From: Ranitomeya imitator | Lineage: Eukaryota | Reading direction: 5' to 3' | DNA: 64,000 bases | NCBI RefSeq assembly: GCF_032444005.1 | Contig: NC_091289.1 | Location: forward strand, 199,702,001 to 199,766,000 | Shown here: positions 18,246 to 58,317 of the stretch, in pieces | Layout of the letters: every line of letters starts with the position of its first letter | Position numbering within the stretch: position 1 is the first letter of the stretch | The notes under the pieces: generated by a model | The model's database searches: none | The model's input: only the letters and a program-made list of their open reading frames with translations | Told to the model about the DNA's origin: nothing | Translations under genes and position numbers: made by a program

Positions 18246-18432
18246 CAGATGGCATCAAAGTTCAGCCCTTTGTAGGAGTCAAACTTCCATTTGCAGTTGA
18301 CGATGGTGGAGAAGCATCTGTCCTTCACCTCGGGGAGTGTTGTGTATTGATCTTTTATAAAACCTTCAAATCCGGACTGTGTCGTCTTCAGAATTCGCAG
18401 ATCTTTGATTCCAGAGTAAACGACGGGCTGAC
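18246..18432 (-). CDS. uox: Urate oxidase exon 5
   Basis: (G)[63 protein letters not shown]|gtaagt; 187 nt. Confidence 0.97.
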
Positions 18433-18552
18433 CTGTGGGGGGGACAGCAAAATGACGGCATAAGATGGCGGTGCGGAGACTACAACACCCAGAGGTCCCC
18501 AGCCCTCTCACACCAAGGACAACCAGACCTGGTCCTGATGGAGATATCCTAC

Positions 18553-18631
18553 CTCCTCGCTCCTGTTCTACTTCACAGAAATGGGTGCCCTCAGAGGAAT
18601 AGATAAAGGCATGAACGTGCTCCACTCCGTC
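18553..18631 (-). CDS. uox: Urate oxidase exon 4
   Basis: [27 protein letters not shown]|gtagga; 79 nt, phase 0/1. Confidence 0.95.
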
Positions 18632-18799
18632 CTGCATAAACAGAGGCACGAAGTCAGAAATGCATGAATTCCCTTATCTAAGCAGATGCAAAACGTCTGT
18701 CGTTCTGGCAGAGTTACCAAACTTGTGCACTCATCACGTCTACCCCTTAGTGTGCGACCAATCAGAGCCTCATATCACTGTACTTACAAGACAAAATGC

Positions 18800-21253: not shown

Positions 21254-22134
21254 TATTATTATTATTATTATTATTATTTATTGTTATAGCGCCATTTATT
21301 CCATGGCGCTTTACATGTGAGGAGGGGTATACATAATGAAAACAAGTACAATAATCTTAAACAATACAAGTCATAACTGGTACAGGAGGAATGAGGACCC
21401 TGCCCGCGAGGGCTCACAATCTACAAGGGATGGGTGAGAATACAGTAGGTGAGGGTAGAGATGGTCATGCAGCGGTTTGGTCGATCGGTGGTAGCTGCAG
21501 GTTGTAGGCTTGTCTGAAGAGGTGGGTCTTCAGGTTCTTTTTGAAGGTTTCGATGGTAGGCGAGAGTCTGATGTGTTGTGGTAGAGGGTTCCAGAGTAGG
21601 GGTGATACGCGAGAGAAATCTTGTATACGATTGTGGGAAGAGGAGATAAGAGGGGAGTAGAGTAGGAGATCTTGTGAGGATCGGAGGTTGCGGGTAGGTA
21701 AGTACCGGGAGACGAGGTCACAGATGTATGGAGGAGACAGGTTGTGGATGGCTTTGTACGTCATGGTTAGGGTTTTGTAGTGGAGTCTCTGGGCAATGGG
21801 GAGCCAGTGAAGGGATTGACAGAGGGGAGAGGCCGGGGAATAGCGGGGGGACAGGTGGATTAGTCGGGCAGCAGAGTTTAGAATAGATTGGAGGGGTGCG
21901 AGAGTGTTAGCGGGGAGGCCACAGAGCAGGAGGTTGCAGTAGTCAAGGCGAGAGATGATGAGGGCATGGACTAGGGTTTTTGCAGATTCATGGTTGAGGA
22001 ATGAACGGATTCGTGAAATATTTTTGAGTTGCAGTCGGCAGGAAGTGGAAAGGGCTTGGATATGTGGTTTGAAGGAGAGATCAGCGTCAAGGATTACCCC
22101 GAGGCAGCGAGCTTGTGGGACTGGGGAGAGTGGG
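21254..22134 (-). mobile_element. L2-clade LINE, 5'-truncated (~880 bp) with (TAA)n tail
   Basis: Uninterrupted frame ARCLGVILDADLSFKPHI...LIISRLDYCNLLLCGLP...LHWLP...FKKNLKTHLF (L2 ORF2 C-terminus); (TTA)n at 21254-21280 on +; ACAATGT at 21247-21253 and 22160-22166 is a candidate TSD. Confidence 0.93.
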
Positions 22135-31100: not shown

Positions 31101-34100
31101 TACAGGGAGCTCCCCCTAGTGGTGGCTGCAGACAGTATCTTATCATGTATCTCTATATACAGGGAGCTCCCCCTAGTGGTGGCTGCAGAGAGGATCTTAT
31201 CATGTATCTCTGTACACAGGGAGCTCCCCCTAGTGGTGACTGCAGGCAGTATCTTATCATGTCTCTCTGTATACAGGGAGCTCCCCCTAGTGGTGGCTGC
31301 AGACAGGATCTTATCATGTATCTCTGTACACAGGGAGCTCCCCCTAGTGGTGGCTGCAGACAGGATCTTATCATGTATCTCTGTATACAGGGAGCTCCCC
31401 CTAGTGGTGGCTGCAGACAGGATCTTATCATGTATCTCTGTATACAGGGAGCCCCCCCTAGTGGTGGCTGCAGACAGAACCTTATCATGTATCTCTGTAT
31501 ACAGGGAGCTCCCCCTAGTGGTGTCTGCAGACAGGATATTATCATGTATCTCTGTATCCAGGGAGCTCCCCCTAGTGGTGGCTGCAGACAGAATGTTACA
31601 ATGTATCTCTGTATACAGGGAGCTCCCCCTAGTGGTGGCTGCAGACAGAACCTTATCATGTATCTCTGTATACAGGGAGCTCCCCCTAGTGGTGACTGCA
31701 GACAGGATCTTATCATGTATCTCTGTACACAAGGAGCTCCCCCTAGTGGTGGCTGCAGACAGGATCTTATCATGTATCTCTGTATACAGGGAGCTCCCCC
31801 TAGTGGTGGCTGGAGACAGGATCCTATCATGTATCTCTGTATACAGGGAGCTCCCCCTAGTGGTGGCTGCAGACAGGATCTTATCATGTATCTCTGTATA
31901 CAGGGAGCTCCCCCTAGTGGTGGCTGGAGACAGGATCCTATCATGTATCTCTGTATACAGGGAGCTCCCCCTAGTGGTGTCTGCAGACAGAATGTTACAA
32001 TGTATCTCTGTATACAGGGAGCTCCCCCTAGTGGTGGCTGCAGACAGAACCTTATCATGTATCTCTGTATACAGGGAGCTCCCCCTAGCGGTGACTGCAG
32101 ACAGGATCTTATCATGTATCTCTGTATACAGGGAGCTCCCCCTAGTGGTGGCTGCAGACAGGATCTTATCATGTATCTCTGTATACAGGGAGCTCCCCCT
32201 AGTGGTGGCTGCAGACAGGATCTTATCATGTATCTCTGTATACAGGGAGCTCCCCCTAGTGGTGACTGCAGACAGGATCCTATCATGTATCTCTGTATAC
32301 AGGGAGCTCCCCCTAGTGGTGGCTGCAGACAGGATCTTATCATGTATCTCTGTATACAGGGAGCTCCCCCTAGTGGTGATTTCAGACAGGATCTTATCAT
32401 GTATCTCTGTATACAGGGAGCTCCCCCTAGTGGTGGCTGCAGACAGGATCTTATCATGTATCTCTGTATACAGGGAGCTCCCCCTAGTGGTGACTGCAGA
32501 CAGGATCTTATCATGTATCTCTGTATACAGGGAGCTCCCCCTAGTGGTAGCTGCAGACAGGATCTTATCATGTATCTCTGTATACAGGGAGCTCCCCCTA
32601 GTGGTGACTGCAGACAGGATCTTATGTATCTCTGTATACAGGGAGCTCCCCCTAGTGGTGACTGCAGACAGGATCTTATCATGTATCTCTGTATACAGGG
32701 AGCTCCCCCTAGTGGTGGCTGCAGACAGGATCTTATCATGTATCTCTGTATACAGGGAGCTCCCCCTAGTGGTGACTGCAGACAGGATCTTATCATGTAT
32801 CTCTGTATACAGGGAGCTCCCCCTAGTGGTGGCTGCAGACAGGATCTTATCATGTATCTCTGTATACAGGGAGCTCCCCCTAGTGGTGGTTGCAGACAGG
32901 ATCTTATCATGTATCTCTGTATACAGGGAGCTCCCCCTAGTGGTGGCTGCAGACAGGATCTTATCATGTATCTCTGTATACAGGGAGCCCCCCCTAGTGG
33001 TGGCTGCAGACAGAACCTTATCATGTATCTCTGTATACAGGGAGCTCCCCCTAGTGGTGTCTGCAGACAGAATGTTACAATGTATCTCTGTATACAGGGA
33101 GCTCCCCCTAGTGGTGGCTGCAGACAGAACCTTATCATGTATCTCTGTATACAGGGAGCTCCCCCTAGCGGTGACTGCAGACAGGATCTTATCATGTATC
33201 TCTGTATACAGGGAGCTCCCCCTAGTGGTGACTGCAGACAGGATCTTATCATGTATCTCTGTATACAGGGAGCTCCCCCTAGTGGTGGCTGCAGACAGGA
33301 TCCTATCATGTATCTCTGTATACAGGGAGCTCCCCCTAGTGGTGGATGCAGACAGGATCTTATCATGTATCTCTGTATACAGGGAGCTCCCCCTAGTGGT
33401 GACTGCAGACAGAATCTTATCATGTATCTCTGTATACAGGGAGCTCCCCCTAGTGGTGGCTGCAGACAGGATCTTATCATGTATCTCTGTATACAGGGAG
33501 CTCCCCCTAGTGGTGATTTCAGACAGGATCTTATCATGTATCTCTGTATACAGGGAGCTCCCCCTAGTGGTGGCTGCAGACAGGATCTTATCATGTATCT
33601 CTGTATACAGGGAGCTCCCCCTAGTGGTGACTGCAGACAGGATCTTATCATGTATCTCTGTATACAGGGAGCTCCCCCTAGTGGTAGCTGCAGACAGGAT
33701 CTTATCATGTATCTCTGTATACAGGGAGCTCCCCCTAGTGGTGGCTGCAGACAGGATCTTATCATGTATCTCTGTATACAGGGAGCTCCCCCTAGTGGTG
33801 ACTGCAGACAGGATCCTATCATGTATCTCTGTATACAGGGAGCTCCCCCTAGTGGTGGCTGCAGACAGGATCTTATCATGTATCTCTGTATACAGGGAGC
33901 TCCCCCTAGTGGTGATTTCAGACAGGATCTTATCATGTATCTCTGTATACAGGGAGCTCCCCCTAGTGGTGGCTGCAGACAGGATCTTATCATGTATCTC
34001 TGTATACAGGGAGCTCCCCCTAGTGGTGACTGCAGACAGGATCTTATCATGTATCTCTGTATACAGGGAGCTCCCCCTAGTGGTAGCTGCAGACAGGATC

Positions 34101-37100
34101 TTATCATGTATCTCTGTATACAGGGAGCTCCCCCTAGTGGTGACTGCAGACAGGATCTTATGTATCTCTGTATACAGGGAGCTCCCCCTAGTGGTGACTG
34201 CAGACAGGATCTTATCATGTATCTCTGTATACAGGGAGCTCCCCCTAGTGGTGGCTGCAGACAGGATCTTATCATGTATCTCTGTATACAGGGAGCTCCC
34301 CCTAGTGGTGGCTGCAGACAGGATCTTATCATGTATCTCTGTATACAGGGAGCTCCCCCTAGTGGTGGTTGCAGACAGGATCTTATCATGTATCTCTGTA
34401 TACAGGGAGCTCCCCCTAGTGGTGGCTGCAGACAGGATCTTATCATGTATCTCTGTATACAGGGAGCTCCCCCTAGTGGTGACTGCAGACAGGATCTTAT
34501 CATGTATCTCTGTATACAGGGAGCTCCCCCTAGTGGTGGCTGCAGACAGGATCTTATCATGTATCTCTGTATACAGGGAGCTCCCCCTAGTGGTGGTTGC
34601 AGACAGGATCTTATCATGTATCTCTGTATACAGGGAGCTCCCCCTAGTGGTGGCTGCAGACAGGATCTTATCATGTATCTCTGTATACAGGGAGCCCCCC
34701 CTAGTGGTGGCTGCAGACAGAACCTTATCATGTATGTCTGTATACAGGGAGCTCCCCCTAGTGGTGTCTGCAGACAGAATGTTACAATGTATCTCTGTAT
34801 ACAGGGAGCTCCCCCTAGTGGTGGCTGCAGACAGAACCTTATCATGTATCTCTGTATACAGGGAGCTCCCCCTAGCGGTGACTGCAGACAGGATCTTATC
34901 ATGTATCTCTGTATACAGGGAGCTCCCCCTAGTGGTGACTGCAGACAGGATCTTATCATGTATCTCTGTATACAGGGAGCTCCCCCTAGTGGTGGCTGCA
35001 GACAGGATCCTATCATGTATCTCTGTATACAGGGAGCTCCCCCTAGTGGTGGATGCAGACAGGATCTTATCATGTATCTCTGTATACAGGGAGCTCCCCC
35101 TAGTGGTGACTGCAGACAGAATCTTATCATGTATCTCTGTATACAGGGAGCTCCCCCTAGTGGTGGCTGCAGACAGGATCTTATCATGTATCTCTGTATA
35201 CAGGGAGCTCCCCCTAGTGGTGATTTCAGACAGGATCTTATCATGTATCTCTGTATACAGGGAGCTCCCCCTAGTGGTGACTGCAGACAGGATCTTATCA
35301 TGTATCTCTGTATACAGGGAGCTCCCCCTAGTGGTAGCTGCAGACAGGATCTTATCATGTATCTCTGTATACAGGGAGCTCCCCCTAGTGGTGACTGCAG
35401 ACAGGATCTTATGTATCTCTGTATACAGGGAGCTCCCCCTAGTGGTGACTGCAGACAGGATCTTATCATGTATCTCTGTATACAGGGAGCTCCCCCTAGT
35501 GGTGGCTGCAGACAGGATCTTATCATGTATCTCTGTATACAGGGAGCTCCCCCTAGTGGTGACTGCAGACAGGATCTTATCATGTATTTCTGTATACAGG
35601 GAGCTCCCCCTAGTGGTGACTGCAGACAGGATCTTATCATGCATCTCTGTATACAGGGAGCTCCCCCTAGTGGTGGCTGCAGACAGGATCTTATCATGTA
35701 TCTCTGTATACAGGTAGCTCCCCCTAGTGGTGGCTGCAGACAGGATCTTATCACGTATCTCTGTATACAGGGAGCTCCCCCTAGTGGTGGCTGCAGACAG
35801 GATCTTATGTATCTCTGTATACAGGGAGCTCCCCCTAGTGGTGGCTGCAGACAGGATCTTATCATGTATCTCTGTATACAGGTAGCTCCCCCTAGTGGTG
35901 ACTGCAGACAGGATCTTATCATGTATCTCTGTATACAGGGAGCTCCCCCTAGTGGTGGCTGCAGACAGGATCTTATCATGTATCTCTGTATACAGGGAGC
36001 TCCCCCTAGTGGTGACTGCAGACAGGATCTTATCATGTATCTCTGTATACAGGGAGCTCCCCCTAGTGGTGGCTGCAGAGAGGATCTTATCATGTATCTC
36101 TGTATACAGGGAGCTCCCCCTAGTGGTGGCTGCAGACAGTATCTTATCATGTATCTCTATATACAGGGAGCTCCCCCTAGTGGTGGCTGCAGAGAGGATC
36201 TTATCATGTATCTCTGTACACAGGGAGCTCCCCCTAGTGGTGACTGCAGGCAGTATCTTATCATGTATCTCTGTATACAGGGAGCTCCCCCTAGTGGTGG
36301 CTGCAGACAGGATCTTATCATGTATCTCTGTACACAGGGAGCTCCCCCTAGTGGTGGCTGCAGACAGGATCTTATCATGTATCTCTGTATACAGGGAGCT
36401 CCCCCTAGTGGTGGCTGCAGACAGGATCTTATCATGTATCTCTGTATACAGGGAGCCCCCCCTAGTGGTGGCTGCAGACAGAACCTTATCATGTATCTCT
36501 GTATACAGGGAGCTCCCCCTAGTGGTGTCTGCAGACAGGATATTATCATGTATCTCTGTATACAGGGAGCTCCCCCTAGTGGTGGCTGCAGACAGAATGT
36601 TACAATGTATCTCTGTATACAGGGAGCTCCCCCTAGTGGTGGCTGCAGACAGAACCTTATCATGTATCTCTGTATACAGGGAGCTCCCCCTAGTGGTGAC
36701 TGCAGACAGGATCTTATCATGTATCTCTGTACACAAGGAGCTCCCCCTAGTGGTGGCTGCAGACAGGATCTTATCATGTATCTCTGTATACAGGGAGCTC
36801 CCCCTAGTGGTGGCTGGAGACAGGATCCTATCATGTATCTCTGTATACAGGGAGCTCCCCCTAGTGGTGGCTGCAGACAGGATCTTATCATGTATCTCTG
36901 TATACAGGGAGCTCCCCCTAGTGGTGGCTGGAGACAGGATCCTATCATGTATCTCTGTATACAGGGAGCTCCCCCTAGTGGTGTCTGCAGACAGAATGTT
37001 ACAATGTATCTCTGTATACAGGGAGCTCCCCCTAGTGGTGGCTGCAGACAGAACCTTATCATGTATCTCTGTATACAGGGAGCTCCCCCTAGCGGTGACT

Positions 37101-39712
37101 GCAGACAGGATCTTATCATGTATCTCTGTATACAGGGAGCTCCCCCTAGTGGTGGCTGCAGACAGGATCTTATCATGTATCTCTGTATACAGGGAGCTCC
37201 CCCTAGTGGTGGCTGCAGACAGGATCTTATCATGTATCTCTGTATACAGGGAGCTCCCCCTAGTGGTGACTGCAGACAGGATCCTATCATGTATCTCTGT
37301 ATACAGGGAGCTCCCCCTAGTGGTGGCTGCAGACAGGATCTTATCATGTATCTCTATACAGGGAGCTCCCCCTAGTGGTGATTTCAGACAGGATCTTATC
37401 ATGTATCTCTGTATACAGGGAGCTCCCCCTAGTGGTGGCTGCAGACAGGATCTTATCATGTATCTCTGTATACAGGGAGCTCCCCCTAGTGGTGACTGCA
37501 GACAGGATCTTATCATGTATCTCTGTATACAGGGAGCTCCCCCTAGTGGTAGCTGCAGACAGGATCTTATCATGTATCTCTGTATACAGGGAGCTCCCCC
37601 TAGTGGTGACTGCAGACAGGATCTTATGTATCTCTGTATACAGGGAGCTCCCCCTAGTGGTGACTGCAGACAGGATCTTATCATGTATCTCTGTATACAG
37701 GGAGCTCCCCCTAGTGGTGGCTGCAGACAGGATCTTATCATGTATCTCTGTATACAGGGAGCTCCCCCTAGTGGTGACTGCAGACAGGATCTTATCATGT
37801 ATCTCTGTATACAGGGAGCTCCCCCTAGTGGTGGCTGCAGACAGGATCTTATCATGTATCTCTGTATACAGGGAGCTCCCCCTAGTGGTGGTTGCAGACA
37901 GGATCTTATCATGTATCTCTGTATACAGGGAGCTCCCCCTAGTGGTGGCTGCAGACAGGATCTTATCATGTATCTCTGTATACAGGGAGCCCCCCCTAGT
38001 GGTGGCTGCAGACAGAACCTTATCATGTATGTCTGTATACAGGGAGCTCCCCCTAGTGGTGTCTGCAGACAGAATGTTACAATGTATCTCTGTATACAGG
38101 GAGCTCCCCCTAGTGGTGGCTGCAGACAGAACCTTATCATGTATCTCTGTATACAGGGAGCTCCCCCTAGCGGTGACTGCAGACAGGATCTTATCATGTA
38201 TCTCTGTATACAGGGAGCTCCCCCTAGTGGTGACTGCAGACAGGATCTTATCATGTATCTCTGTATACAGGGAGCTCCCCCTAGTGGTGGCTGCAGACAG
38301 GATCCTATCATGTATCTCTGTATACAGGGAGCTCCCCCTAGTGGTGGATGCAGACAGGATCTTATCATGTATCTCTGTATACAGGGAGCTCCCCCTAGTG
38401 GTGACTGCAGACAGAATCTTATCATGTATCTCTGTATACAGGGAGCTCCCCCTAGTGGTGGCTGCAGACAGGATCTTATCATGTATCTCTGTATACAGGG
38501 AGCTCCCCCTAGTGGTGATTTCAGACAGGATCTTATCATGTATCTCTGTATACAGGGAGCTCCCCCTAGTGGTGGCTGCAGACAGGATCTTATCATGTAT
38601 CTCTGTATACAGGGAGCTCCCCCTAGTGGTGACTGCAGACAGGATCTTATCATGTATCTCTGTATACAGGGAGCTCCCCCTAGTGGTAGCTGCAGACAGG
38701 ATCTTATCATGTATCTCTGTATACAGGGAGCTCCCCCTAGTGGTGGCTGCAGACAGGATCTTATCATGTATCTCTGTATACAGGGAGCTCCCCCTAGTGG
38801 TGACTGCAGACAGGATCTTATGTATCTCTGTATACAGGGAGCTCCCCCTAGTGGTGACTGCAGACAGGATCTTATCATGTATCTCTGTATACAGGGAGCT
38901 CCCCCTAGTGGTGGCTGCAGACAGGATCTTATCATGTATCTCTGTATACAGGGAGCTCCCCCTAGTGGTGACTGCAGACAGGATCTTATCATGTATTTCT
39001 GTATACAGGGAGCTCCCCCTAGTGGTGACTGCAGACAGGATCTTATCATGCATCTCTGTATACAGGGAGCTCCCCCTAGTGGTGGCTGCAGACAGGATCT
39101 TATCATGTATCTCTGTATACAGGTAGCTCCCCCTAGTGGTGGCTGCAGACAGGATCTTATCACGTATCTCTGTATACAGGTAGCTCCCCCTAGTGGTGGC
39201 TGCAGACAGGATCTTATCACGTATCTCTGTATACAGGGAGCTCCCCCTAGTGGTGGCTGCAGACAGGATCTTATGTATCTCTGTATACAGGGAGCTCCCC
39301 CTAGTGGTGGCTGCAGACAGGATCTTATCATGTATCTCTGTATACAGGGAGCTCCCCCTAGTGGTGGCTGCAGACAGGATCTTATCATGTATCTCTGTAT
39401 ACAGGGAGCTCCCCCTAGTGGTGACTGCAGACAGGATCTTATCATGTATCTCTGTATACAGGGAGCTCCCCCTAGTGGTGACTGCAGACAGGATCTTATC
39501 ATGTATCTCTGTATACAGGGAGCTCCCCCTAGTGGTGGCTGCAGACAGGATCTTATCATGTATCTCTGTATACAGGGAGCTCCCCCTAGTGGTGACTGCA
39601 GACAGGATCTTATCATGCATGTCTGTATACAGGGAGCTCCCTCTAGTGGTGACTGCAGACAGGATCTTATCATGTATCTCTGTATACAGGGAGCTCCCCC
39701 TAGTGGTGACTG
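22135..39712. repeat. 57-bp satellite, right block (~308 copies) with higher-order structure
   Basis: Same unit; 54-bp (-CAT) variants and diagnostic SNV series recur every ~3.3-5 kb; one 55-bp monomer near 37355. Confidence 0.98.
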
Positions 39713-39795
39713 TTCTGCTTTATCTTTTTTTTCTGTAGTGTATTTTGAAACAATTTTCAGAAAACTTAAGCCTTTGATCAAGTATCTACAAATAC

Positions 39796-39912
39796 CTTTG
39801 TAAAGCGTCTCCAGGGGGCTTCTTCAATGTAGGTCTTTGCTCTTGTCACATGACTGAAGTATGTGAGGAAATGATTACAAATCTCCAGAGAGAAATCCTC
39901 AATGGTGTTTAT
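39796..39912 (-). CDS. uox: Urate oxidase exon 3
   Basis: TTGCACAG|INTIEDFSLEICNHFLTYFSHVTRAKTYIEEAPWRRFTK|gtattt; 117 nt. Confidence 0.96.
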
Positions 39913-40124
39913 CTGTGCAATAAAATAAGATATAAAGTCATTGATGCGGATGACGGCCTGGAGACGATATAATCCGACTATCAAAGGCGACAGAAATGTA
40001 ATAAATTGGGACCTGAGTGTTAATGATCCTCGTGTGGTGACAGTTACAGGTGTGGACTGTATTGGCTGCCACCAGAGAGCACCAGCATACACATTCAGTA
40101 AACACAAATATGACTAATTCTCAC

Positions 40125-40337
40125 CCCTTTGGTCTTGGCCAGGACGTAGACGGTATTTTTGATGGTATCGGTGGGAATGATGTCGCTGTTATCGCCCTCC
40201 AGGTAATCCTTCTTGGAGCTGAGGGTGAGCTCCACCGAGGCCTCGATCTCCCGGATGTAATGCCTGTCGCCGTCTCTCCGGATCTGCAGAACTTTCACAG
40301 CGTTCTTCCCATAACCTGTCCGCACAAACTCCACGTC
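40125..40337 (-). CDS. uox: Urate oxidase exon 2
   Basis: TTCTTCCAG|[23 protein letters not shown]...[23 protein letters not shown]|gtgaga; includes the catalytic Lys and Thr motifs; 213 nt. Confidence 0.97.
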
Positions 40338-40544
40338 CTGGAAGAACAAAAATCAGGGAGAATAAAAGCAAAGTGTCATGTCAGTGATGAGAAGCCGATG
40401 CTGCACCTTGTGGGGTCGTCCCGATGTACGGACCCTGCAGAGGATCAGAGAAAGCCAAGAAATGTGGGCGATATCCGGCAGCCCCCCGATTAGAACTTGC
40501 AGTTTTTATTCTGAGGGTCTCGTAGTAGCGGAGAGCAGGGGCTT

Positions 40545-40922
40545 CTGTAGGGGGCGTCTGTACGGGGCTTCTGAACAGGGCTTCTGTACGGGGCGTCTGT
40601 ACGGGGCTTTTGTGTGGGGCGTCTGTACGGGGCGTCTGTACGGGGCTTCTGTACGGGGCGTCTGTACGGGGCTTCTCTACGGGGCTTCTCTACGGGGCGT
40701 CTGTACGGGGCGTCTGTACGTGGCGTCTGTACGTGGCTTCTGTAAGGGGCTTCTCTACGGGGCTTCTGTAGGGGGTGTCTGTAGGGGGCGTCTGTAGGGG
40801 GCTTCTGTACGGGGCTTTTGTGTGGGGCTTCTGTACGGGGCGTCTCTACGGGGCTTCTGTACGGGGCGTCTCTACGGGGCTTCTGTACGGGGCGTCTCTA
40901 TGGGGCGTCTGTACGGGGCGTC
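40545..40922. repeat. 13-bp minisatellite in uox intron 1
   Basis: Unit GGGGCGTCTGTAC / GGGGCTTCTGTAC. Confidence 0.92.
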
Positions 40923-41479
40923 TGGATACATCGGAGCTGTAAGTCGCCCGTTCACATCCACAGCTTTCTGCTTTTTTTTCTCACCAGACCTTGGAGATTT
41001 ACCTTCTGTCCATCAGATGGTTCCTGAAATCTGGGCCCTTATATTTGGTGCTCACTGGTAATTAATCAGAGCTGCCTAAAAACACACCCACTTGATAAAA
41101 ACTAGAAAAAGTAACGGTAACTATAAAGCTCCAAATCTCAGGAACCGTTTAAGAAAAAACCCAGGGAAGCATCGGGAATGAAATAAGAGCAAACACTGGA
41201 GACGGCTTTTCGGTAGGGGGCAGTGTGAACGGAGCCTGAGAAGACGACATTGGGGACGTCTATGATCAGAGAACCGCCATCTCCAGAACGACTGGATGTC
41301 ATAGAGGCCACAGCAGCTCGTGATGTGCGGCCACGGAGCGGGATCTGCCCTGCAGGAACACTGCACCGAGAATAGGGCAACTATTGTCCTAGTAATTGGG
41401 TTCGTAATTCACTGTGGTGTAAAACAGCGGGAAAGACGAGCCGCAGACTGCGAGGATATGAGCACTGCCGGCCCCAAGC

Positions 41480-42165
41480 ATCAGCAGCCGCCCCCGAGGA
41501 ACATCCGCCCCAGAGCAACAATCACCCCCAACACAGGAGCCACCCCTGAGGAGCAGGCGCCCCCGAGCAGTAGCCGCCCTGAGGAGCAGCCACCCCTGAG
41601 GAGCAGCAGTAGCCATCCCTGAGGAGCAGCTGCACCAAACAGTAGCCGCCCTGAGGAGCAGCCACCCCCGAGTAGTGGCCGTCCTGAGGAGCAGCCACCC
41701 CTGAAGAGCAGCAGCCACCCCAGAGGAGCAGGCGCCGCCAAGCAGTAGATGCCCTGAGCAGCCACCCCCAAGCAGTGGCCGCCTTGAGCAGTAGCACCCA
41801 CCCCTGAGCAGTAGCAGCCACCCCTGGGCAGTAGCAGCCACCCCTGAGCAGTAGCAGCCACCCCTGGGCAGTAGCAGCCACCCCTGAGGAGCAGCAGCCA
41901 CCCCTGAGGAGCAGCAGCAGCCACCCCCGAGCATTAGCCAGCCTGAGGAGCAGCCACCCCTGATCAGTAGCAGCCAACCCTTGAGGAGCAGCTGCCCCCG
42001 AGCAGTAGCCGCCCCCAAGCAGTAGCAGCCACCCCCGAGCAGTGGCCGTCCTGAGGAGCAGCTGCACCTGAACAGTAGCCGCCCTGAGGAGCAGCCGCCC
42101 CCGAGCAGTAGCGACCCTGAGCAGTAGCTGCCCCTAAACAGTAGCCGCCCCTGAGCAGTAGCAGC
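41480..42165. repeat. Degenerate ~18-21-bp CAG-rich minisatellite in uox intron 1
   Basis: Recurrent GAGCAGTAGCAGCCACCCCT motif. Confidence 0.88.
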
Positions 42166-43154
42166 CTTGTCTCCATGTCACAGTCTCCGTGCAGGAACGT
42201 CACCAATCATGAGGACACTACACAGGTCTCCTGCGAGGCAGTGGGGCGCAGCGGTACCTGGAACACTGCTCTGACCTCGTAGGCACCTGGTGGAAATATC
42301 ATTATACTCGCAGTCTAAATCCACGTACAATGTGGGTAATGTGTGCGCATATGTAACCAATGTGTTTCATAGCAGTACTAGCATTGTGTGCAGAATTGCG
42401 ATGTGTATATATACTGTATGTGTGCATAATGTGTATACGAGTGTACATGTATAAATGTGTAATATATATATGTTTTATATAGCAGTGCTAATAATGTGTG
42501 GAGCACTGTGGTATGCAGATGTGTGTAATGTATGTGTATATATTTATATATACGCACACTGTATATGTGTTTTGTAGAGTTCTCTTTCTGTTCTCCATGC
42601 TTACTGACACACAATGCAAAAACTGAGTCAACTTTTCCCCTTTTTATCCGGTTTCAGGTGCGATTTTCATATTGCCCACACCTGTTACTTGCCACAGGTG
42701 AGTGTGAACGAGCATCGCATGCTTGAAGCAAAGTTGTTTACCCACAAGTTTGGAAAGGTGCCAACAATATTGTCTGGATTATTTTTGACGTTTTGTGTTC
42801 TATATAGCGGTACTAATGACGTGCAGTGTTGCGGTATGTGTAGTGTATACGAGTGTAACATGTATAGATATATGTGTGTGTCCTATATAGCGGTACTAAT
42901 AACGTGCACCGTGTTGCGGTGTGTTATGATCTTCCAAATTGAGAACTTGTGGGTAAATTGAATGTGTGCACTTGGGGGGGATTATCAGTGAGTTTGTGCC
43001 CCGGATGAAGACCTGCCTTCCTTCCTCTCGGGGTGGGCTATATTAGATGGGTTCCCATTTTTCGGAGACCTGCGGTGCCCACTGTGAGAGGCACTCACTC
43101 ATGATGTTGGGGGGCACAAGATGCATTTCTCTTCATGTATCGGGTCGCTGTTAC

Positions 43155-43184
43155 CTTGAACGATCTCCTGTAGGTCTGTGCCAT
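43155..43184 (-). CDS. uox: Urate oxidase exon 1 coding part (MAQTYRRSFK)
   Basis: Kozak AAGG-ATG-G, 10 codons, phase-0 donor AAG|GTAACA matching the phase-0 acceptor of exon 2; completes a 909-nt CDS (302 aa + stop). Confidence 0.8.
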
Positions 43185-43270
43185 CCTTCGATCAGTGTCC
43201 GGAGCAGTGCAATGCCAGCTGTGTGTGCAGGAGCCCGGAGGGGCCCGGTTGGGGGGCAGCTATTGTACGC

Positions 43271-43364
43271 GGACTTTGGGCCAATCCGCTTCTGTTTGTT
43301 CGGTTGAACAGTAACCTCAACTCGGGGGTCACCGATCTCTGATCGGGGTCAGTTATTTGTTAAC
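43271..43364 (-). promoter_or_regulatory. uox: Putative hepatocyte-type uox promoter (HNF4-like and HNF1-like motifs)
   Basis: Minus strand CCAAAGTCC (43271-43279) and GTTAACAAATAAC (43352-43364; 2 mismatches to GTTAATNATTAAC), 90-180 nt upstream of the ATG. Motif match only. Confidence 0.4.
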
Positions 43365-47607: not shown

Positions 47608-47708
47608 ATGTCCGGCAGCCGCTTCCTGTCTGTGCTCGGTGTGATCGGCGTCTCTCTGGTGACATGTGAGATCGCGTGTCGCAATGAAGGTGGAGATCCC
47701 GTAGACTG
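47608..47708 (+). CDS. dnase2b: Deoxyribonuclease II beta exon 1 (signal peptide + start of mature protein)
   Basis: MSGSRFLSVLGVIGVSLVTCEIACRNEGGDPVD-TG|gtaggt; the I-x-C-R-N-E-x-G-x-x-V-D-W motif is diagnostic of the DNase II N-terminus. Missed by the ORF track. Confidence 0.92.
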
Positions 47709-49589: not shown

Positions 49590-51330
49590 GAGACTATGAT
49601 GGGGGCCTCAGGGTCCCAGCGCACAGAAGAGTCTGGGGAAGGACGAGTCCGGAAGAGATGACGGGGGTCCCAGCACGCAGAAGAGTCCGGGGGGACGATG
49701 ACGGGGGTCCCAGCACACAGGAGAGTCTGGGGGGGGGGGACGATGATGGGGGGGTCCCAGCACGCAGAAGAGTCTGGGGGGACGATGACAGGGGGTCCCA
49801 GCACGCAGAAGAGTCCGGGGGGGGGGGGGGACGATGATGGGGGCCTCAGCACACAGAAGAGTCTGGGGAAGGACGAGTCTGGGGGGATGATGACGGGGGT
49901 CCCAGCACACAGAAGAGTCCGGGGGGGGAGGGGGGGGGTAGAGCGATGACGGGGGGTCCCAGCGCGCAGAAGAGTCCGGGGGGACGATGACGGGGGGTCC
50001 CAGCGCGCAGAAGAGTCCGGGGGGACGATGACGGGGGGTCCCAGCACGCAGAAGAGTCCGGGGGGACGATGACGGGGGGTCCCAGCACGCAGAAGAGTCC
50101 GGGGGGACGATGACGGGGGGTCCCAGCACGCAGAAGAGTCCGGGGGGACGATGACGGGGGTCCCAGCACGCAGAAGAGTCCGGGGGGACGATGACGGGGG
50201 GGTCCCAGCGCGCAGAAGAGTCCGGGGGGACGATGACGGGGGGTCCCAGCACGCAGAAGAGTCCGGGGGGACAATGACGGGGGGTCCCAGCACGCAGAAG
50301 AGTCCGGGGGGACGATGACGGGGGTCCCAGCACGCAGAAGAGTCCGGGGGGACGATGACGGGGGGTCCCAGCGCGCAGAAGAGTCCGGGGGGACGATGAC
50401 GGGGGGTCCCAGCACGCAGAAGAGTCCGGGGGGACGATGACGGGGGGTCCCAGCACGCAGAAGAGTCCGGGGGGACGATGACGGGGGGTCCCAGCACGCA
50501 GAAGAGTCCGGGGGGACGATGACGGGGGTCCCAGCACGCAGAAGAGTCCGGGGGGACGATGACGGGGGGTCCCAGCGCGCAGAAGAGTCCGCGGGGGGAA
50601 GATGACGGGGGTCCCAGCACGCAGAAGAGTCCGGGGGGATGATGACGGGGGGTCCCACCACGCAGAAGAGTCCGCGGGGGGGGGGGGGGGGGGAAAGATG
50701 ACGGGGGTCCCAGCACGCAGAAGAGTCTGGGGGGATGATGACGGGGGGTCCCAGCACACAGAAGAGTCCGGGGAGGACGACGACGGGGGGGTCCCAGCAC
50801 ACACAAGAGTCCGGGGGGGGGACGACGACGGGGGGTCCCAGCACACACAAGAGTCCGGGGGGGGGGGTTTGACGATGATGGGGGGTCCCAGCACACAGAA
50901 GAGTCCGAGGGGAAACGGTGATGGGGGTCTCAGGGTGCCAGCACACAGAAGAGTCTGGGGAAGGACGAGTCCGGAGAGATGATGACGGGGGTCCCAGCAC
51001 ACAGAAGAGTCCGGGGGGAGACGATGATGGGGGTCTCAGGGTCCCAGCACACAGAAGAGTCTGGGGAAGGACGAGTCCGGAGGAGATGATGACGGGGGTC
51101 CCAGCACACAGAAGAGTCCGGGGGGAAACGGTGATGGGGTCTCAGGGTCCCAGCACACAGAAGAGTCTGGGGAAGGACGAGTCCCGAGAGATGATGATGG
51201 GGGTCCCAGCACACAGAAGAGTCCGGGGGGACGATGACGGGGGGTCCCAGCACACAGAAGAGTCTTTGATGACGGGGGTCCCAGCACACAGAAGAGTCTG
51301 GAGGAATCGATGACGGGGTCCCGGCGGTCC
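49590..51330. repeat. ~40-bp G-tract minisatellite
   Basis: Unit GGGGGTCCCAGCACGCAGAAGAGTCCGGGGGGACGATGAC with variable G-run lengths. Confidence 0.93.
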
Positions 51331-51334
51331 GCCT

Positions 51335-51903
51335 GTCACTTGATGGGGCTCCGGACAGTTGGGCTCCTGTCAGTGGAGGACTCTGGACGTCACTAGGGGG
51401 CTCCGGACGTCACTTGATGGGGTCTGCCTGTCACTTGAGGGCTCCAGACGTCACTGGGGGGCTCCGGTCACTTGATGGGGTCCGCCTGTCACTAGGGGGC
51501 TCCGGTCACTTGATGGCATCCGCCTGTCACTGGGGGGCTCCTGTCAGTTGATGGGGTCTGTCTGTCACTTGGGGGCTCCGGACATCACTGGGGGGCTCCG
51601 GTCACTTGGTGGGGTCCGCCTGTCACTAGGGGGCTCCGGTCAGTTGGCGGAGGCCCGCAGGATCTTCACCTCGTCCCGCGGCCGGTCCTGGCTGTCACTT
51701 GGGGGGGCTCCGGACATCACTGGGGGGCTCCTGTCAGTTGATGGGGTCTGTCTGTCACTGGGGGGCTCCTGTCAGTTGATGGAGCTCCGGTCAGTTGGCG
51801 GAGGCCCGCAGGATCTTCACCTCGTCCCGCGGCCGGTCCTGGCTGTCACTTGGGGGGGCTCCGGACATCACTGGGGGGCTCCTGTCAGTTGATGGAGCTC
51901 CGG
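51335..51903. repeat. Mosaic repeat in the ppil1 3' flank containing two extra copies of the last 17 codons plus stop
   Basis: GTCACT(A/T)GGGGGCTCC-type units; a 53-nt CDS-end copy at 51640-51692 and 51791-51843, identical to 51904-51956. Confidence 0.9.
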
Positions 51904-52404
51904 TCAGTTGGCGGAGGCCCGCAGGATCTTCACCTCGTCCCGCGGCCGGTCCTGGCCGTCCGTCTCCACCATCCCCAGCCTGTTCAGGGTCCCCAGGCCC
52001 TGACACACCCGCCCGAAGATCGTGTGCTTGCCGTCCAGCCACTGCGCCGGGGCCAGGGTGAGGAAGAACTGGCTGCCGTTGGTGTCGGGCCCGGAGTTGG
52101 CCATGGCGAGGATCCCGGCCCCGGTGAACTTCAGCTCCGGGTGCAGCTCGTCGGGGAAGTGCTTCCCGTCATAGATGGAGCCTCCGCCGCGCCCGGTGCC
52201 CGTGGGGTCCCCGCCCTGCACCATGAAGTCCTTGATGATGCGGTGGAACTTGGTGCCGTTGTAGTAGCCGCGGCGGGAGAGCTCGGCGAAGTTCCTGCAG
52301 GTCCGCGGGGCGTGCTCCCAGTATAACTCCACCGTGATCGTGCCCATGCTGCTGTCCAGGCTGACGGTGGCCGGCCGCCAATTATCCGGTGGGATCCCCG
52401 CCAT
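51904..52404 (-). CDS. ppil1: Peptidyl-prolyl isomerase-like 1 (spliceosomal cyclophilin), intronless, 166 aa
   Basis: MAGIPPDNWRPATVSLDSSMGTITVELYWEHAPRTCRNFAELSRRGYYNGTKFHRIIKDFMVQGGDPTGTGRGG...AMANSGPDTNGSQFFLTLAPAQWLDGKHTIFGRV...; N-terminus and motifs are those of PPIL1. ATG at 52404 in Kozak AGG-ATG-G (the ORF-track start at 52521 is TTG). Confidence 0.95.
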   Translation of the reverse strand: MAGIPPDNWRPATVSLDSSMGTITVELYWEHAPRTCRNFAELSRRGYYNGTKFHRIIKDFMVQGGDPTGTGRGGGSIYDGKHFPDELHPELKFTGAGILAMANSGPDTNGSQFFLTLAPAQWLDGKHTIFGRVCQGLGTLNRLGMVETDGQDRPRDEVKILRASAN

Positions 52405-52640
52405 CCTGCACACGTGTGACCGGGGAGCGCCGTCGCGGGAACGCACTTCCGGCCTCCAAGCCTCGTTCTCAGACGCGCAGCCGCAGTCACAGTGACTGTC
52501 CGGCGCAGCTTCCAGTATCAATAAAGTTACTTTTGAATACTCAGTGACGATTGCTCATGGCAACCAATCAGAACGCTTTTTACATTTTCTAATCTCTTTT
52601 GAATAAATTTAAGCTGTAATCTGATTGGTTGCTGTGACAC
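52405..52640 (-). promoter_or_regulatory. ppil1: ppil1 housekeeping-type promoter (CpG-rich; E-box, ETS, paired CCAAT)
   Basis: CACGTG 52411-52416, CCGGAAGT on minus 52445-52452, CCAAT boxes in a 13-bp inverted repeat (52560-52572 / 52620-52632). Confidence 0.6.
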
Positions 52641-56456: not shown

Positions 56457-56628
56457 GTTTGCGATTTATAAGTTACCAATGCGACTGATCAACGAGTCGT
56501 ATGGACCAGGCCTGGACTATTTGTATCTCGACTCAAAGTCGAAGGGATGGCAAGTCAGCAAATTCCTCATCAACATGACCCAGGGGGCGATGGGGCGTGT
56601 GCTGGAGCAGCTCTACCAGTCATACAAG
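56457..56628 (+). CDS. dnase2b: DNase II beta exon 2
   Basis: Long pyrimidine tract, CCGAAG|G completes Trp; FAIYKLPMRLINESYGPGLDYLYLDSKSKGWQVSKFLINMTQGAMGRVLEQLYQSYK|gtgagc. Confidence 0.95.
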
Positions 56629-57169: not shown

Positions 57170-57300
57170 AATTCAGCTAAGAAGGTGCAAATATGAAGGA
57201 AATGTCTCTGTGAAAAGTCAATGTGATGTGCGCGGGATAGTTCCTGAGATTTGCAGGTTTTCTTGCATCTGACAATATTTTCTTATTTTCCTTCGTTTAG

Positions 57301-57382
57301 AGAAACGACACGGCATACATGTTATATAATGATTCTCCGCCGGGAATGAACAGCTCCTTTACAGACAGAGGGCACACCAAGG
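57301..57382 (+). CDS. dnase2b: DNase II beta exon 3 (first catalytic HxK motif)
   Basis: TTCGTTTAG|RNDTAYMLYNDSPPGMNSSFTDRGHTK-G|gtaagt; 82 nt, phase 0/1. Confidence 0.95.
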
Positions 57383-58317
57383 GTAAGTCACAGACAGAGG
57401 ACACACCAAGGGTAAGTCACAGACAGAGGGCACACCATGGATAAGTCACAGACAGAGGACACACCAAGGGTAAGTCACAGACAGAGGACACACCAAGGGT
57501 AAGTCACAGACAGAGGGCACACCATGGATAAGTCACAGACAGAGGACACACCAAGGGTAAGTCACAGACAGAGGGCACACCAAGGGTAAGTCACAGACAG
57601 AGGACACACCAAGGGTAAGTCACAGACAGAGGGCACACCAAGGGTAAGTCACAGACAGAGGACACACCAAGGGTAAGTCACAGACAGAGGACACACCAAG
57701 GGTAAGTCACAGACAGAGGACACACCAAGGGTGAGTCACAGACAAAGGGCACACCAAGGGTAAGTCACAGACAGAGGGCACACCAAGGATAAGTCACAGA
57801 CAGAGGGCACACCAAGGATAAGTCACAGACAGAGGGCACACCAAGGGTAAGTCACAGACAGAGGGCACACCAAGGGTAAGTCACAGACAGAGGGCACACC
57901 AAGGGTAAGTCACAGACAGAGGACACACCAAGGGTAAGTCACAGACAGAGGGCACACCAAGGGTAAGTCACAGACAGAGGGCACATCAAGGGTAAGTCAC
58001 AGACAGAGGGCACACCAAGGATAAGTCACAGACAGAGGGCACATCAAGGGTAAGTCACAGACAGAGGGCACACCAAGGATAAGTCACAGAGAGAGGGCAC
58101 ACCAAGGGTAAGTCACAGACAGAGGGCACACCAAGGATAAGTCACAGACAGAGGGCACACCAGGGGTAAGTCACAGACAGAGGGCACACCAAGGATAAGT
58201 CACAGACAGAGGACACACCAAGGGTAAGTCACAGACAGAGGGCACACCAAGGGTAAGTCACAGAGAGAGGGCACACCAAGGGTAAGTCACAGAGAGAGGG
58301 CACACCAAGGATAAGTC
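57361..58317 (+). repeat. 29-bp tandem array (33 copies) of the exon 3 end plus splice donor
   Basis: Unit ACAGACAGAGGGCACACCAAGG|GTAAGTC; 957 bp = 33 x 29; 24 copies keep GT, 9 have GA. Confidence 0.98.

What the first reader, a model, noticed from the sequence alone, without database searches (positions are those of the whole stretch)
51904..52404. Intact intronless ppil1 nested antisense within dnase2b intron 1
Seen: a complete 166-aa PPIL1 ORF with no introns, very high GC3/CpG, good Kozak context and ETS/E-box/CCAAT motifs upstream, lying between dnase2b exon 1 (47708) and exon 2 (56457) on the opposite strand. No poly(A) remnant or TSD is visible. Established from memory: human PPIL1 is multi-exon, on 6p21, and not part of the SAMD13-UOX-DNASE2B block on 1p; it is a core spliceosome cyclophilin. 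Inference: an old functional retrogene, possibly replacing the parental locus, whose constitutive transcription collides with a tissue-restricted host. One extra residue (IYDGKHF vs recalled IYGKQF) marks the lineage.
Basis: partly seen in the sequence, partly recalled or inferred. Interest (0 to 1): 0.7.

Follow-up and report, generated by a model that had tools for sequence, protein, structure and literature searches.

The report
Intronless PPIL1 retrogene of hyloid frogs
In this poison frog the gene for the spliceosome cyclophilin PPIL1 is an intact, transcribed, intron-free copy made from its own mRNA, lying backwards inside intron 1 of dnase2b; all eight hyloid frogs checked carry it there as their only annotated PPIL1, while other frogs keep the ordinary multi-exon gene elsewhere.

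Summary
A 166-aa PPIL1 ORF with no interruption lies on the minus strand at 52404..51904. It sits between dnase2b exon 1 (ends 47708) and exon 2 (starts 56457).

It is a retrogene that appears to have replaced its parent ("orphan retrogene").
- **Where it occurs:** the same single-exon CDS is nested antisense in the DNase II gene in Ranitomeya, Bufo, Eleutherodactylus, Dendropsophus, Leptodactylus, Mixophyes and Pseudophryne.
- **The ordinary gene:** ppil1 is multi-exon at other loci in Xenopus, Pelobates, Lithobates, Hyperolius and Gastrophryne.
- **Copy number:** each hyloid proteome shows only one PPIL1.
- **Selection:** dN/dS among retrogene orthologues is 0.04-0.13.
- **Expression:** contigs from four putative RNA runs cover the CDS co-linearly and stop about 60 nt upstream of the ATG.
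- **Composition:** GC3 rose from 0.36-0.51 in parental genes to 0.84-0.95.

The extra Asp is shared by all Neobatrachia, including frogs that keep the parental gene, so it predates the retroposition. The proposed "collision" with dnase2b transcription is untested.

The gene is already annotated by NCBI, but I found no paper describing it as a retrogene. This scan's unchecked notes report four similar replacements on other DNA of this genome: MARCHF6, UHRF1, SRPK1 and LZTFL1. Verdict: a new member of a known kind, of moderate interest.

The parts
51904..52404 (-). ppil1 coding sequence: 166 codons plus TGA, no intron
   Evidence: ORF list and translation. Pfam PF00160. Matches human PPIL1 in PDB at E=6.5e-92. 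Identical to stored protein P0121 and 99% identical to Ranitomeya variabilis PPIL1.
52405..52470 (-). 5'UTR. Transcript contigs end at 52439-52470, which gives an approximate TSS. No upstream ATG.
   Evidence: Contig pieces from four runs stop at 52463, 52470, 52439 and 52452. Depth is zero at 52484-52833 in all four runs.
52441..52471 (-). Conserved 5' block ending in an ETS-type CCGGAAGT site (52452-52445). It is shared by all four hyloid retrogenes aligned and resembles the region upstream of the X. laevis parental ATG.
   Evidence: Alignment A2. Local alignment to X. laevis -85..-50: 18 of 20 matches with Mixophyes at the same distance from the ATG, a score above all 1000 shuffles; Ranitomeya p about 0.013; Dendropsophus and Leptodactylus not significant.
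52411..52416 (-). CACGTG E-box just upstream of the ATG, conserved in the three Nobleobatrachia aligned
52560..52574 (-). Inverted CCAAT box (CTGATTGG core) conserved in Ranitomeya, Dendropsophus and Leptodactylus. A second CCAAT lies at 52624-52628. Candidate promoter elements (inferred).
   Evidence: Alignment A2 and sequence.
51640..51903 (-). Proximal 3'UTR. It holds two extra tandem copies (51791-51847 and 51640-51696) of the last 57 nt of the CDS with the stop codon.
   Evidence: TRF period 113. Repeat family D3, 99% and 81% identical. tblastn matches to residues 144-166. Short contigs bridge these junctions in runs X1, X5 and X15. The related organism B has 156 nt in place of these 605 bp.
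49657..51639 (-). Tandem arrays downstream of the gene (38/134-bp repeats, then a 41-bp G-rich array). Probably part of a long 3'UTR (inferred).
   Evidence: TRF. An X5 contig at 51274-51553 has depth similar to the CDS contig. The first canonical poly(A) signal on the minus strand is ATTAAA at 49515-49520.
47608..47708 (+). dnase2b exon 1 (ATG at 47608, GT donor at 47709)
   Evidence: Conserved with the Mixophyes, Leptodactylus and Dendropsophus loci. Sequence.
56457..56628 (+). dnase2b exon 2
   Evidence: AG acceptor at 56455-56456 and GT donor at 56629. Pfam DNase_II E=6.5e-12. Conserved in other hyloid loci.
57286..57393 (+). dnase2b exon 3 (extent of the tblastn match; exact ends not determined)
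18245..43327 (-). uox (uricase) exons downstream of ppil1 on the same strand: about 43160-43327 (weak match), 40122-40343, 39781-39912, 18551-18631, 18245-18433
   Evidence: tblastn of Leptodactylus and Dendropsophus ORFs against the window. Pfam Uricase for two exons.

Best explanation
This is the ppil1 gene of hyloid frogs. It is a processed retrocopy of the PPIL1 mRNA that inserted antisense into intron 1 of dnase2b in the stem of Hyloidea (Myobatrachidae plus Nobleobatrachia), after the split from Ranoidea. It has been kept under strong purifying selection since then, and it took over as the only PPIL1 gene when the four-exon parental gene was lost: an 'orphan retrogene', or retrogene replacement. 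It is transcribed as an unspliced mRNA from a short CpG-rich promoter. The TSS lies about 60-66 nt upstream of the ATG and is flanked by ETS, E-box and CCAAT motifs. The first roughly 65-85 nt upstream of the ATG seem to derive from the parental 5'UTR. After the introns were lost, synonymous sites became extremely GC-rich (GC3 0.84-0.95 against 0.36-0.51 in parental genes). This fits the published observation that long-lived intronless genes need high GC content for efficient expression. Shown here: intronless structure, position, phylogenetic distribution, purifying selection, co-linear transcript contigs. Inferred: loss of the parent, promoter elements, the reason for the GC3 rise, and the length of the 3'UTR.
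For: (1) Structure. The CDS is contiguous. X. laevis ppil1.L has four coding exons over 1.75 kb. Gene spans are 10-15 kb in Lithobates, Pelobates, Hyperolius and Gastrophryne, with no DNase II neighbour; Hyperolius is flanked by RPS10- and seryl-tRNA-synthetase-type genes.
(2) Position. A 501- or 504-bp single-exon CDS lies inside the DNase_II gene on the opposite strand in R. variabilis, Bufo gargarizans, Mixophyes, Dendropsophus, Leptodactylus, Pseudophryne and E. coqui. The dnase2b exons flanking it are conserved with the window.
(3) One PPIL1 per hyloid species among the 120 best hits and in the 90% clusters.
(4) NG86 dN/dS is 0.04-0.13 among five retrogene orthologues. The columns expected to hold the cyclophilin active-site residues are invariant in 31 sequences.
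(5) Contigs from four runs of four studies cover 51927-52470 with no joint. Nothing lies on the unique 350 bp upstream, and the assemblies are only 50-133 Mb, so they behave as transcriptomes.
(6) The retrogene CDS is a sharp GC island (0.63-0.68) in a 0.35-0.5 background in four other species. GC3 is 0.84-0.95, against 0.51 in Lithobates and 0.36 in X. laevis. This matches PMC7181179.
(7) The 5' block is shared with the X. laevis parental upstream region.
Against: No poly(A) tract or target-site duplication survives, and no 3'UTR homology to the Lithobates cDNA was found. The retroposition mechanism therefore rests on intron loss plus relocation. Loss of the parent rests only on annotated proteomes; no hyloid genome was searched at the DNA level. 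The runs are only guessed to be RNA, and contigs cannot prove strand or true ends. In the protein tree the two myobatrachid retrogenes fall outside a group of ranoids plus Nobleobatrachia (97/93). Hyloid monophyly is only marginally not rejected (AU p=0.062), so a single simple event is not fully secure. The 5'UTR homology is significant for Mixophyes and Ranitomeya only.
Confidence: 0.8

Rival explanations
1. The retrocopy is an additional paralogue. The multi-exon parental ppil1 still exists in hyloid genomes but is unannotated, misassembled or more divergent, so there was no replacement.
For: Large, repeat-rich frog genomes are hard to annotate. Only the best 120 of 7970 hits were listed.
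Against: At least 14 hyloid species each show a single PPIL1, all of the hyloid sequence type. The seven looked up, plus the window, all sit at the dnase2b locus. Any PPIL1 of 70% identity or more would have ranked within the list, which runs down to invertebrates. The very low dN/dS fits a sole essential copy.
Confidence: 0.1
2. The history is more complex than one insertion in stem Hyloidea. Either the retrocopy predates crown Neobatrachia, was lost in ranoids and was later gene-converted by the parent in Nobleobatrachia, or ppil1 mRNA inserted twice independently into the same intron.
For: The protein tree puts the myobatrachid retrogenes outside ranoid parents plus nobleobatrachian retrogenes (97/93). 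Residues N8, R10, E157 and K159 are shared by ranoids and Nobleobatrachia, while Mixophyes keeps the ancestral states. AU p=0.062. No flank homology between Mixophyes and Nobleobatrachia exists outside the mRNA-derived part.
Against: The retrogene lies in the same intron, in the same orientation, with its stop codon about 2-3.4 kb from the dnase2b start codon, in both groups. Only about four conservative, partly homoplastic sites carry the signal: Gastrophryne and Rhinoderma have Q10. The AU test does not reject monophyly. The alternative needs many more events.
Confidence: 0.07
3. The gene lost its introns by recombination with a cDNA at its original locus and then moved by a DNA-level rearrangement, rather than by retroposition into dnase2b.
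For: No poly(A) tract or target-site duplication is left to prove insertion by target-primed reverse transcription.
Against: It needs two rare events instead of one. Only the mRNA-sized unit moved: the conserved part runs from about -85 to the stop codon, with none of the ancestral neighbours. It landed cleanly inside a host intron.
Confidence: 0.02
4. Assembly artefact or cDNA contamination.
For: None beyond the intronless structure itself.
Against: The same syntenic position is seen in eight independent assemblies from different groups. Divergence between the copies (dS 0.3-0.9 by NG86) is in line with comparisons between frog families.
Confidence: 0.01

Closest known systems
'Orphan' retrogenes of the human genome (Ciomborowska et al. 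2013, PMC3548309; 25 candidates, e.g. CHMP1B)
   Same: A single-exon retrocopy of a multi-exon housekeeping gene that replaced its progenitor. It is under very strong purifying selection and shows no sign of restricted use. It is annotated as an ordinary gene and was never recognised as a retrogene.
   Different: A different gene and lineage: PPIL1 in hyloid frogs. Human PPIL1 is the multi-exon parental type (from memory; X. laevis is shown to have four coding exons). Here the parent survives in sister lineages, so the event can be bracketed.
Amphioxus SYCP1 retrogene replacement (Garstang & Ferrier 2018, PMC5803294)
   Same: The multi-exon parent was lost, and the single-coding-exon retrogene at a new locus carries on the function.
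   Different: AmphiSYCP1 co-opted a neighbour's bidirectional promoter and evolved a multi-exon 5'UTR. The ppil1 transcript contigs show no 5' splice joint and have a short 5'UTR partly inherited from the parent. The ppil1 retrogene is nested antisense in an intron rather than beside a gene.
GC enrichment of functional retrogenes and intronless genes (Mordstein et al. 2020, PMC7181179)
   Same: The functional retrocopy is much more GC-rich at silent sites than intron-containing parental genes, and the local neighbourhood is not GC-rich.
   Different: The shift is extreme here, about +0.35 to +0.6 in GC3, and is replicated in five frog families. Whether it is driven by selection for export and expression or by biased gene conversion at a promoter-proximal CpG island was not tested.
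Other intronless replacements noted by this scan in the same genome (MARCHF6, UHRF1, SRPK1, LZTFL1; notes s1-271768, s1-271762, s1-294874, s1-280612)
   Same: Reported as intact intronless copies of essential multi-exon genes, shared by hyloid or neobatrachian frogs and apparently sole copies. The MARCHF6 note also reports GC-rich silent sites.
   Different: They lie on other DNA, and their claims were not checked here. Three are dated to Neobatrachia, earlier than ppil1, whose parent persists in ranoids.

Membership tests
PPIL1 orthologue (spliceosomal cyclophilin, Pfam PF00160) | Cyclophilin-type PPIase domain over the whole protein | tested here: met
   PF00160 E=1.4e-52, residues 16-163.
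PPIL1 orthologue (spliceosomal cyclophilin, Pfam PF00160) | Closest to PPIL1 rather than to PPIA, PPIL2, PPIL3, CWC27 or PPWD1 | tested here: met
   Human PPIL1 (chains from spliceosome structures such as 5mqf, 5xjc, 6qdv) scores 309 bits. PPIL2 scores 160, PPIL3 145 and PPIA 118. All top database hits are named PPIL1.
PPIL1 orthologue (spliceosomal cyclophilin, Pfam PF00160) | Conserved active-site and ligand-groove residues | tested here: met
   R55, F60, M61, Q63, A102, N103, F113/F114, W122, L123 and H127 are invariant in 31 vertebrate PPIL1 sequences. Their equivalence to the cyclophilin A catalytic residues is from memory.
PPIL1 orthologue (spliceosomal cyclophilin, Pfam PF00160) | Isomerase activity and spliceosome association | not testable with these tools
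   Needs biochemistry or a pull-down.
Processed retrocopy / retrogene | Lacks all introns of the parental gene | tested here: met
   The three coding-region introns of X. laevis ppil1.L (exon limits near residues 17, 71 and 93) are all absent. The CDS is contiguous in the window and in five fetched hyloid loci (L004-L008), one of them a Dendropsophus duplicate scaffold.
Processed retrocopy / retrogene | Lies at a locus unrelated to the parental one | tested here: met
   Hyloids: inside dnase2b intron 1, next to uox. Hyperolius: between RPS10-type and seryl-tRNA-synthetase-type genes. Pelobates, Lithobates, Gastrophryne and Xenopus: no DNase II neighbour.
Processed retrocopy / retrogene | Poly(A) tract at the 3' end and flanking target-site duplications | tested here: inconclusive
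   None seen in the window or in the Mixophyes locus read in full, and 3' flanks are not alignable between the four hyloids compared. This is expected after more than 100 Myr (age from memory of published frog timetrees).
Processed retrocopy / retrogene | Carries parental UTR sequence but not parental promoter or flanks | tested here: inconclusive
   The 5' block at -85..-50 resembles the X. laevis upstream region: significant for Mixophyes (0 of 1000 shuffles) and Ranitomeya (p about 0.013), not for two others. No 3'UTR similarity to the Lithobates cDNA.
Orphan retrogene / retrogene replacement | Parental gene absent from the genome | tested here: inconclusive
   Only one PPIL1 per hyloid proteome. 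Hyloid genomes could not be searched at the DNA level with these tools.
Orphan retrogene / retrogene replacement | Retrocopy under purifying selection | tested here: met
   NG86 dN/dS is 0.04-0.13 in all ten pairs among five hyloid species.
Orphan retrogene / retrogene replacement | Retrocopy transcribed | tested here: met
   Co-linear contigs in four runs from four studies cover the CDS and 5'UTR but not the unique upstream DNA. Caveat: that the runs are RNA is the tool's guess, supported by assembly size and by that internal control.
Nested antisense gene in a host intron | Whole gene lies inside one intron of a host gene on the other strand | tested here: met
   The CDS and mapped 5'UTR (51904-52470, minus strand) lie between dnase2b exon 1 (47608-47708, plus) and exon 2 (56457-56628, plus). 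The 3' end was not mapped. The first poly(A) signal at 49515 would still lie inside the intron.

The most novel reading that the evidence does not exclude
ppil1 is not an isolated case. It would be one of an unusual wave of retrogene replacements of essential single-copy genes in stem neobatrachian and hyloid frogs. This scan's unchecked notes list MARCHF6, UHRF1, SRPK1 and LZTFL1 in only 755 windows of this genome, and two of the five (PPIL1, SRPK1) are splicing factors. Each replacement would be followed by a strong rise in synonymous GC. Within-genome retrocopy pipelines that need a parental gene cannot see such a wave.
Probability: 0.3. Interest if true: 0.7.

Novelty: new member of a known kind. 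Interest (0 to 1): 0.45.

Why it matters
PPIL1 is a core spliceosome cyclophilin. In the largest frog radiation its gene no longer needs splicing, has a different promoter context, and lies antisense inside another gene. This has three consequences.
- **Regulation:** regulatory data on ppil1 cannot be transferred between Xenopus or Rana and hyloid frogs.
- **A natural experiment:** the parent survives in ranoids and the retrogene in hyloids. One can therefore see what an essential gene must change to survive without introns. Here the change is a jump in GC3 from 0.5 or less to 0.84-0.95, with no detectable acceleration of protein change.
- **A possible wider pattern:** together with the scan's other notes, it hints that retrogene replacement may have been unusually common in early neobatrachian evolution. 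Standard retrocopy surveys, which need the parent in the same genome, would miss that.

Tried and rejected
- **Poly(A) and target-site duplications:** I looked in the window and the Mixophyes flanks and found none.
- **3'UTR homology:** I compared hyloid 3' flanks with the Lithobates cDNA and the X. laevis locus. Nothing matched beyond the CDS.
- **Extra Asp as a retrogene marker:** rejected, because ranoids with the multi-exon gene have it too.
- **Regional GC as the cause of high GC3:** rejected for Mixophyes, Dendropsophus, Leptodactylus and E. coqui, where the CDS is a GC island in AT-richer DNA. In the window, GC-rich satellites obscure this.
- **Second PPIL1 copy nearby:** only the two 3'-end fragments in the window lineage.
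- **YN00 and ML dS estimates:** unstable or saturated with this codon bias, so only NG86 ratios are quoted.
- **uox gene models starting upstream of ppil1 in Mixophyes and R. variabilis:** I could not confirm an upstream exon in the window.
- **Literature:** searches for PPIL1 with retrogene, and for frog retrogene surveys, found nothing specific.
- **DNA not held:** for R. variabilis, Bufo, Pseudophryne, Lithobates, Pelobates, Hyperolius and Gastrophryne, only gene ranges could be used, not sequences.

Full report
**Observation**

The minus strand carries an uninterrupted ORF from the ATG at 52404 to the TGA at 51906-51904 (166 aa).
- It is a full-length cyclophilin domain (PF00160, E=1.4e-52).
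- Its best solved relative is human PPIL1 from spliceosome structures (309 bits, against 160 or less for PPIL2, PPIL3, CWC27 and PPIA).
- GC3 is 0.952 and CpG o/e 0.81. The window as a whole is 0.515 GC and has no N.
- dnase2b exon 1 runs from the ATG at 47608 to 47708, followed by a GT donor. Exon 2 starts at 56457 after an AG acceptor and matches Pfam DNase_II. Both are on the + strand.

The ETS, E-box and CCAAT motifs and the Kozak context are also present.

**Whose gene is it**

The ORF is identical to a stored protein (P0121) and 99% identical to Ranitomeya variabilis PPIL1. The next closest are other dendrobatoids, then Bufo (93%) and Eleutherodactylus (92%). The window therefore comes from a dendrobatid poison frog.

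**Comparative gene structure (the main test)**

By exact-protein look-up, the annotated ppil1 gene range is exactly the CDS length (501 or 504 bp) and lies inside the DNase_II gene on the opposite strand in seven species:
- Ranitomeya variabilis and Bufo gargarizans
- Mixophyes fleayi
- Dendropsophus ebraccatus
- Leptodactylus fuscus
- Pseudophryne corroboree and Eleutherodactylus coqui

Where DNA was available, the CDS translates without interruption, and the flanking dnase2b exons 1-3 are conserved with the window.

Outside Hyloidea the picture differs.
- X. laevis ppil1.L has four coding exons spread over 1.75 kb.
- The gene spans about 10 kb in Lithobates and Pelobates and about 15 kb in Hyperolius and Gastrophryne.
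- None of these has a DNase II neighbour. In Hyperolius the neighbours are RPS10-type and seryl-tRNA-synthetase-type genes.

The intronless copy at dnase2b is thus shared by both branches of Hyloidea (Myobatrachidae and Nobleobatrachia). It is absent, as the annotated gene, from Ranoidea, Pelobatoidea and Pipidae. Given the accepted frog phylogeny (from memory), the simplest reading is one retroposition in stem Hyloidea.

**Replacement**

Every hyloid species in the search and cluster listings has a single PPIL1 of the hyloid type. Dendropsophus has two accessions, but one lies on a 37-kb unplaced scaffold with the same neighbours and is probably a haplotig. A second PPIL1 of 70% identity or more would have ranked within the listed hits. 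Loss of the parent is therefore likely. It remains an inference from annotation, because no hyloid genome could be searched at the DNA level.

**Selection**

Among the window, E. coqui, Dendropsophus, Leptodactylus and Mixophyes, NG86 dN/dS is 0.04-0.13. The columns expected to hold the cyclophilin active-site residues are invariant. Branch lengths in the protein tree show no general acceleration of the retrogene lineages compared with ranoid parental genes.

**Expression**

Twenty runs hold the stretch, most with about 0.75 of the sampled words. I laid contigs from four runs of four studies on 51265-52833 (1,569 letters).
- Each run gives one long contig co-linear with the CDS: 51927-52463, 51931-52470, 51927-52439 and 51904-52452.
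- There is no joint inside the CDS or 5'UTR.
- There is no coverage at all on the unique 350 bp upstream, 52484-52833.
- The assemblies are only 50-133 Mb.

The runs therefore behave as transcriptomes, and the silent upstream stretch serves as an internal control. The tool marks 'RNA' as a guess, and contigs cannot prove strand or true ends. The common 5' limit suggests a TSS near 52463-52470. The break near 51927-51931 is what a 31-mer graph produces at the edge of the repeated CDS end.

**5' region**

All four hyloid sequences aligned share a block ending in CCGGAAGT, 40-85 nt upstream of the ATG. The three Nobleobatrachia also share CACGTG and an inverted CCAAT box.

The block resembles the sequence at -85..-50 of the X. 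laevis parental gene. With Mixophyes it matches 18 of 20 positions at the same distance from the ATG, a score above all 1000 shuffles. For the window p is about 0.013, and the other two species are not significant. I read this as part of the parental 5'UTR carried into the retrocopy. That the promoter elements lie just upstream is an inference.

**3' region**

In the window the last 57 nt of the CDS, with the stop codon and 36 nt of 3' flank, occur three times in tandem: 51868-51960 (the real gene end), 51755-51847 and 51604-51696. Short contigs bridge these junctions. A related species (organism B) has 156 nt in place of these 605 bp, and the other hyloid loci lack the extra copies. The triplication is therefore recent and lineage-specific.

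Downstream lie 38/134-bp repeats and a 1.6-kb array of 41-bp units. The first canonical poly(A) signal on the minus strand is ATTAAA at 49515-49520. The 3'UTR may therefore be about 2.4 kb of satellite-like DNA. This was not shown.

**GC content**

Retrogene GC3 is 0.95 (window), 0.94 (E. coqui), 0.87 (Dendropsophus), 0.84 (Leptodactylus) and 0.85 (Mixophyes). Parental GC3 is 0.51 in the Lithobates cDNA and 0.36 in the X. laevis exons.

In the four other hyloids the CDS is a sharp GC peak (0.63-0.68) in DNA of 0.35-0.5 GC. Host-gene exons in the window have GC3 of 0.43-0.78. The rise is therefore specific to the retrogene. Mordstein et al. (PMC7181179) report that functional retrogenes, unlike retropseudogenes, are more GC-rich than their parents despite GC-poorer neighbourhoods, and they link this to expression of unspliced mRNAs. 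This locus is an extreme, replicated example. Whether selection or biased gene conversion caused the rise was not tested.

The extra Asp (IYDGKHF) is real, but all Neobatrachia have it, including the six ranoids in the alignment; the three of these that were looked up have a multi-exon gene. It arose in the parental gene before retroposition. The proposed transcriptional collision with dnase2b could not be examined.

**An unexplained detail**

In the protein tree Neobatrachia are monophyletic (98/89). However, the two myobatrachid retrogenes fall outside a group of ranoids plus Nobleobatrachia (97/93). About four conservative sites carry this signal. The AU test does not quite reject hyloid monophyly (p=0.062). 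Homoplasy is the simplest explanation. An older retrocopy with later gene conversion, or two insertions into the same intron, are not excluded.

**Map of the neighbourhood**

uox lies on the same strand as ppil1, downstream of it, with exons at about 43.3, 40.3, 39.9, 18.6 and 18.4 kb. It is head-to-head with dnase2b exon 1. A ppil1 transcript that failed to terminate would run antisense across the dnase2b start and into uox. NCBI uricase models in Mixophyes and R. variabilis begin upstream of ppil1. That may reflect such transcripts, or an upstream alternative exon.

**Novelty**

The gene is annotated as ppil1 in these genomes. No paper in the searched library connects PPIL1 with retroposition. 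Frog-oriented searches found nothing specific.

The VGP retrocopy survey identifies retrocopies by aligning a genome's own annotated mRNAs and requiring an alignment that spans an exon-exon junction of the parental gene, so it would miss orphan retrogenes. The phenomenon itself is known: 25 human orphan retrogenes (PMC3548309) and amphioxus SYCP1 (PMC5803294).

This scan's own notes, which are unchecked, report four similar replacements elsewhere in this genome: MARCHF6, UHRF1, SRPK1 and LZTFL1. ppil1 would be the fifth, and that hints at a lineage-wide pattern.

No N stretches were involved.

**Verdict**

It is a new member of a known kind, of moderate interest (0.45).

Noticed in passing
window 18800-21247 and 22163-39712: A 57-bp satellite of about 350 copies (95% matches, CpG o/e about 0.01-0.02) fills some 20 kb of the uox intron between the exons at 39.8 kb and 18.6 kb.
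   Followed up: partly
window 43709-47033, 48103-49029, 49657-51264, 52834-53715, 54098-55733, 57361-58319: Six further tandem arrays, with periods of 52-53, 34, 41, 50, 31 and 29 bp and about 18-63 copies each. They occupy most of the uox-dnase2b spacer and dnase2b intron 1, and the 29-bp array starts at the end of the dnase2b exon 3 match. In R. variabilis the interval from the ppil1 stop to the dnase2b ATG is about 2.1 kb, against 4.2 kb here, so the arrays expand quickly.
   Followed up: partly
window 52609-53406 (minus strand): A 265-aa ATG ORF is a by-product of the 50-bp array read in a 150-bp frame. It is not a gene.
   Followed up: yes
L004:9446-9475 (Mixophyes) and the R. variabilis locus: NCBI uricase models start upstream of ppil1 on the same strand: a 10-codon first exon 555 bp upstream in Mixophyes, and about 6.8 kb upstream in R. 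variabilis. In those models ppil1 and dnase2b exon 1 lie inside a uox intron. In Leptodactylus and Dendropsophus uox starts downstream of ppil1. This may be a read-through or an alternative promoter, or a model artefact.
   Followed up: partly
protein alignment A1 and the tree: Myobatrachid PPIL1 (Mixophyes, Pseudophryne) keeps the ancestral residues S8, D157 and R159 (and Q10 in Mixophyes), while ranoid parental genes and nobleobatrachian retrogenes share N8, E157 and K159, and most also share R10. The tree conflicts with the species tree at 97/93; AU p=0.062.
   Followed up: partly
L005 versus L006 (Dendropsophus ebraccatus): An identical ppil1 with uox downstream also sits on a 37-kb unplaced scaffold. 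It is probably an uncollapsed haplotig, not a second locus.
   Followed up: no
other pieces of this genome (scan notes): Scan notes list SRPK1 as another orphan retrogene in frogs. From memory, SRPK1, RPS10 and PPIL1 all lie in human 6p21. It may be worth asking whether loss of the parental copies is linked to rearrangement of that ancestral block. This was not tested.
   Followed up: no
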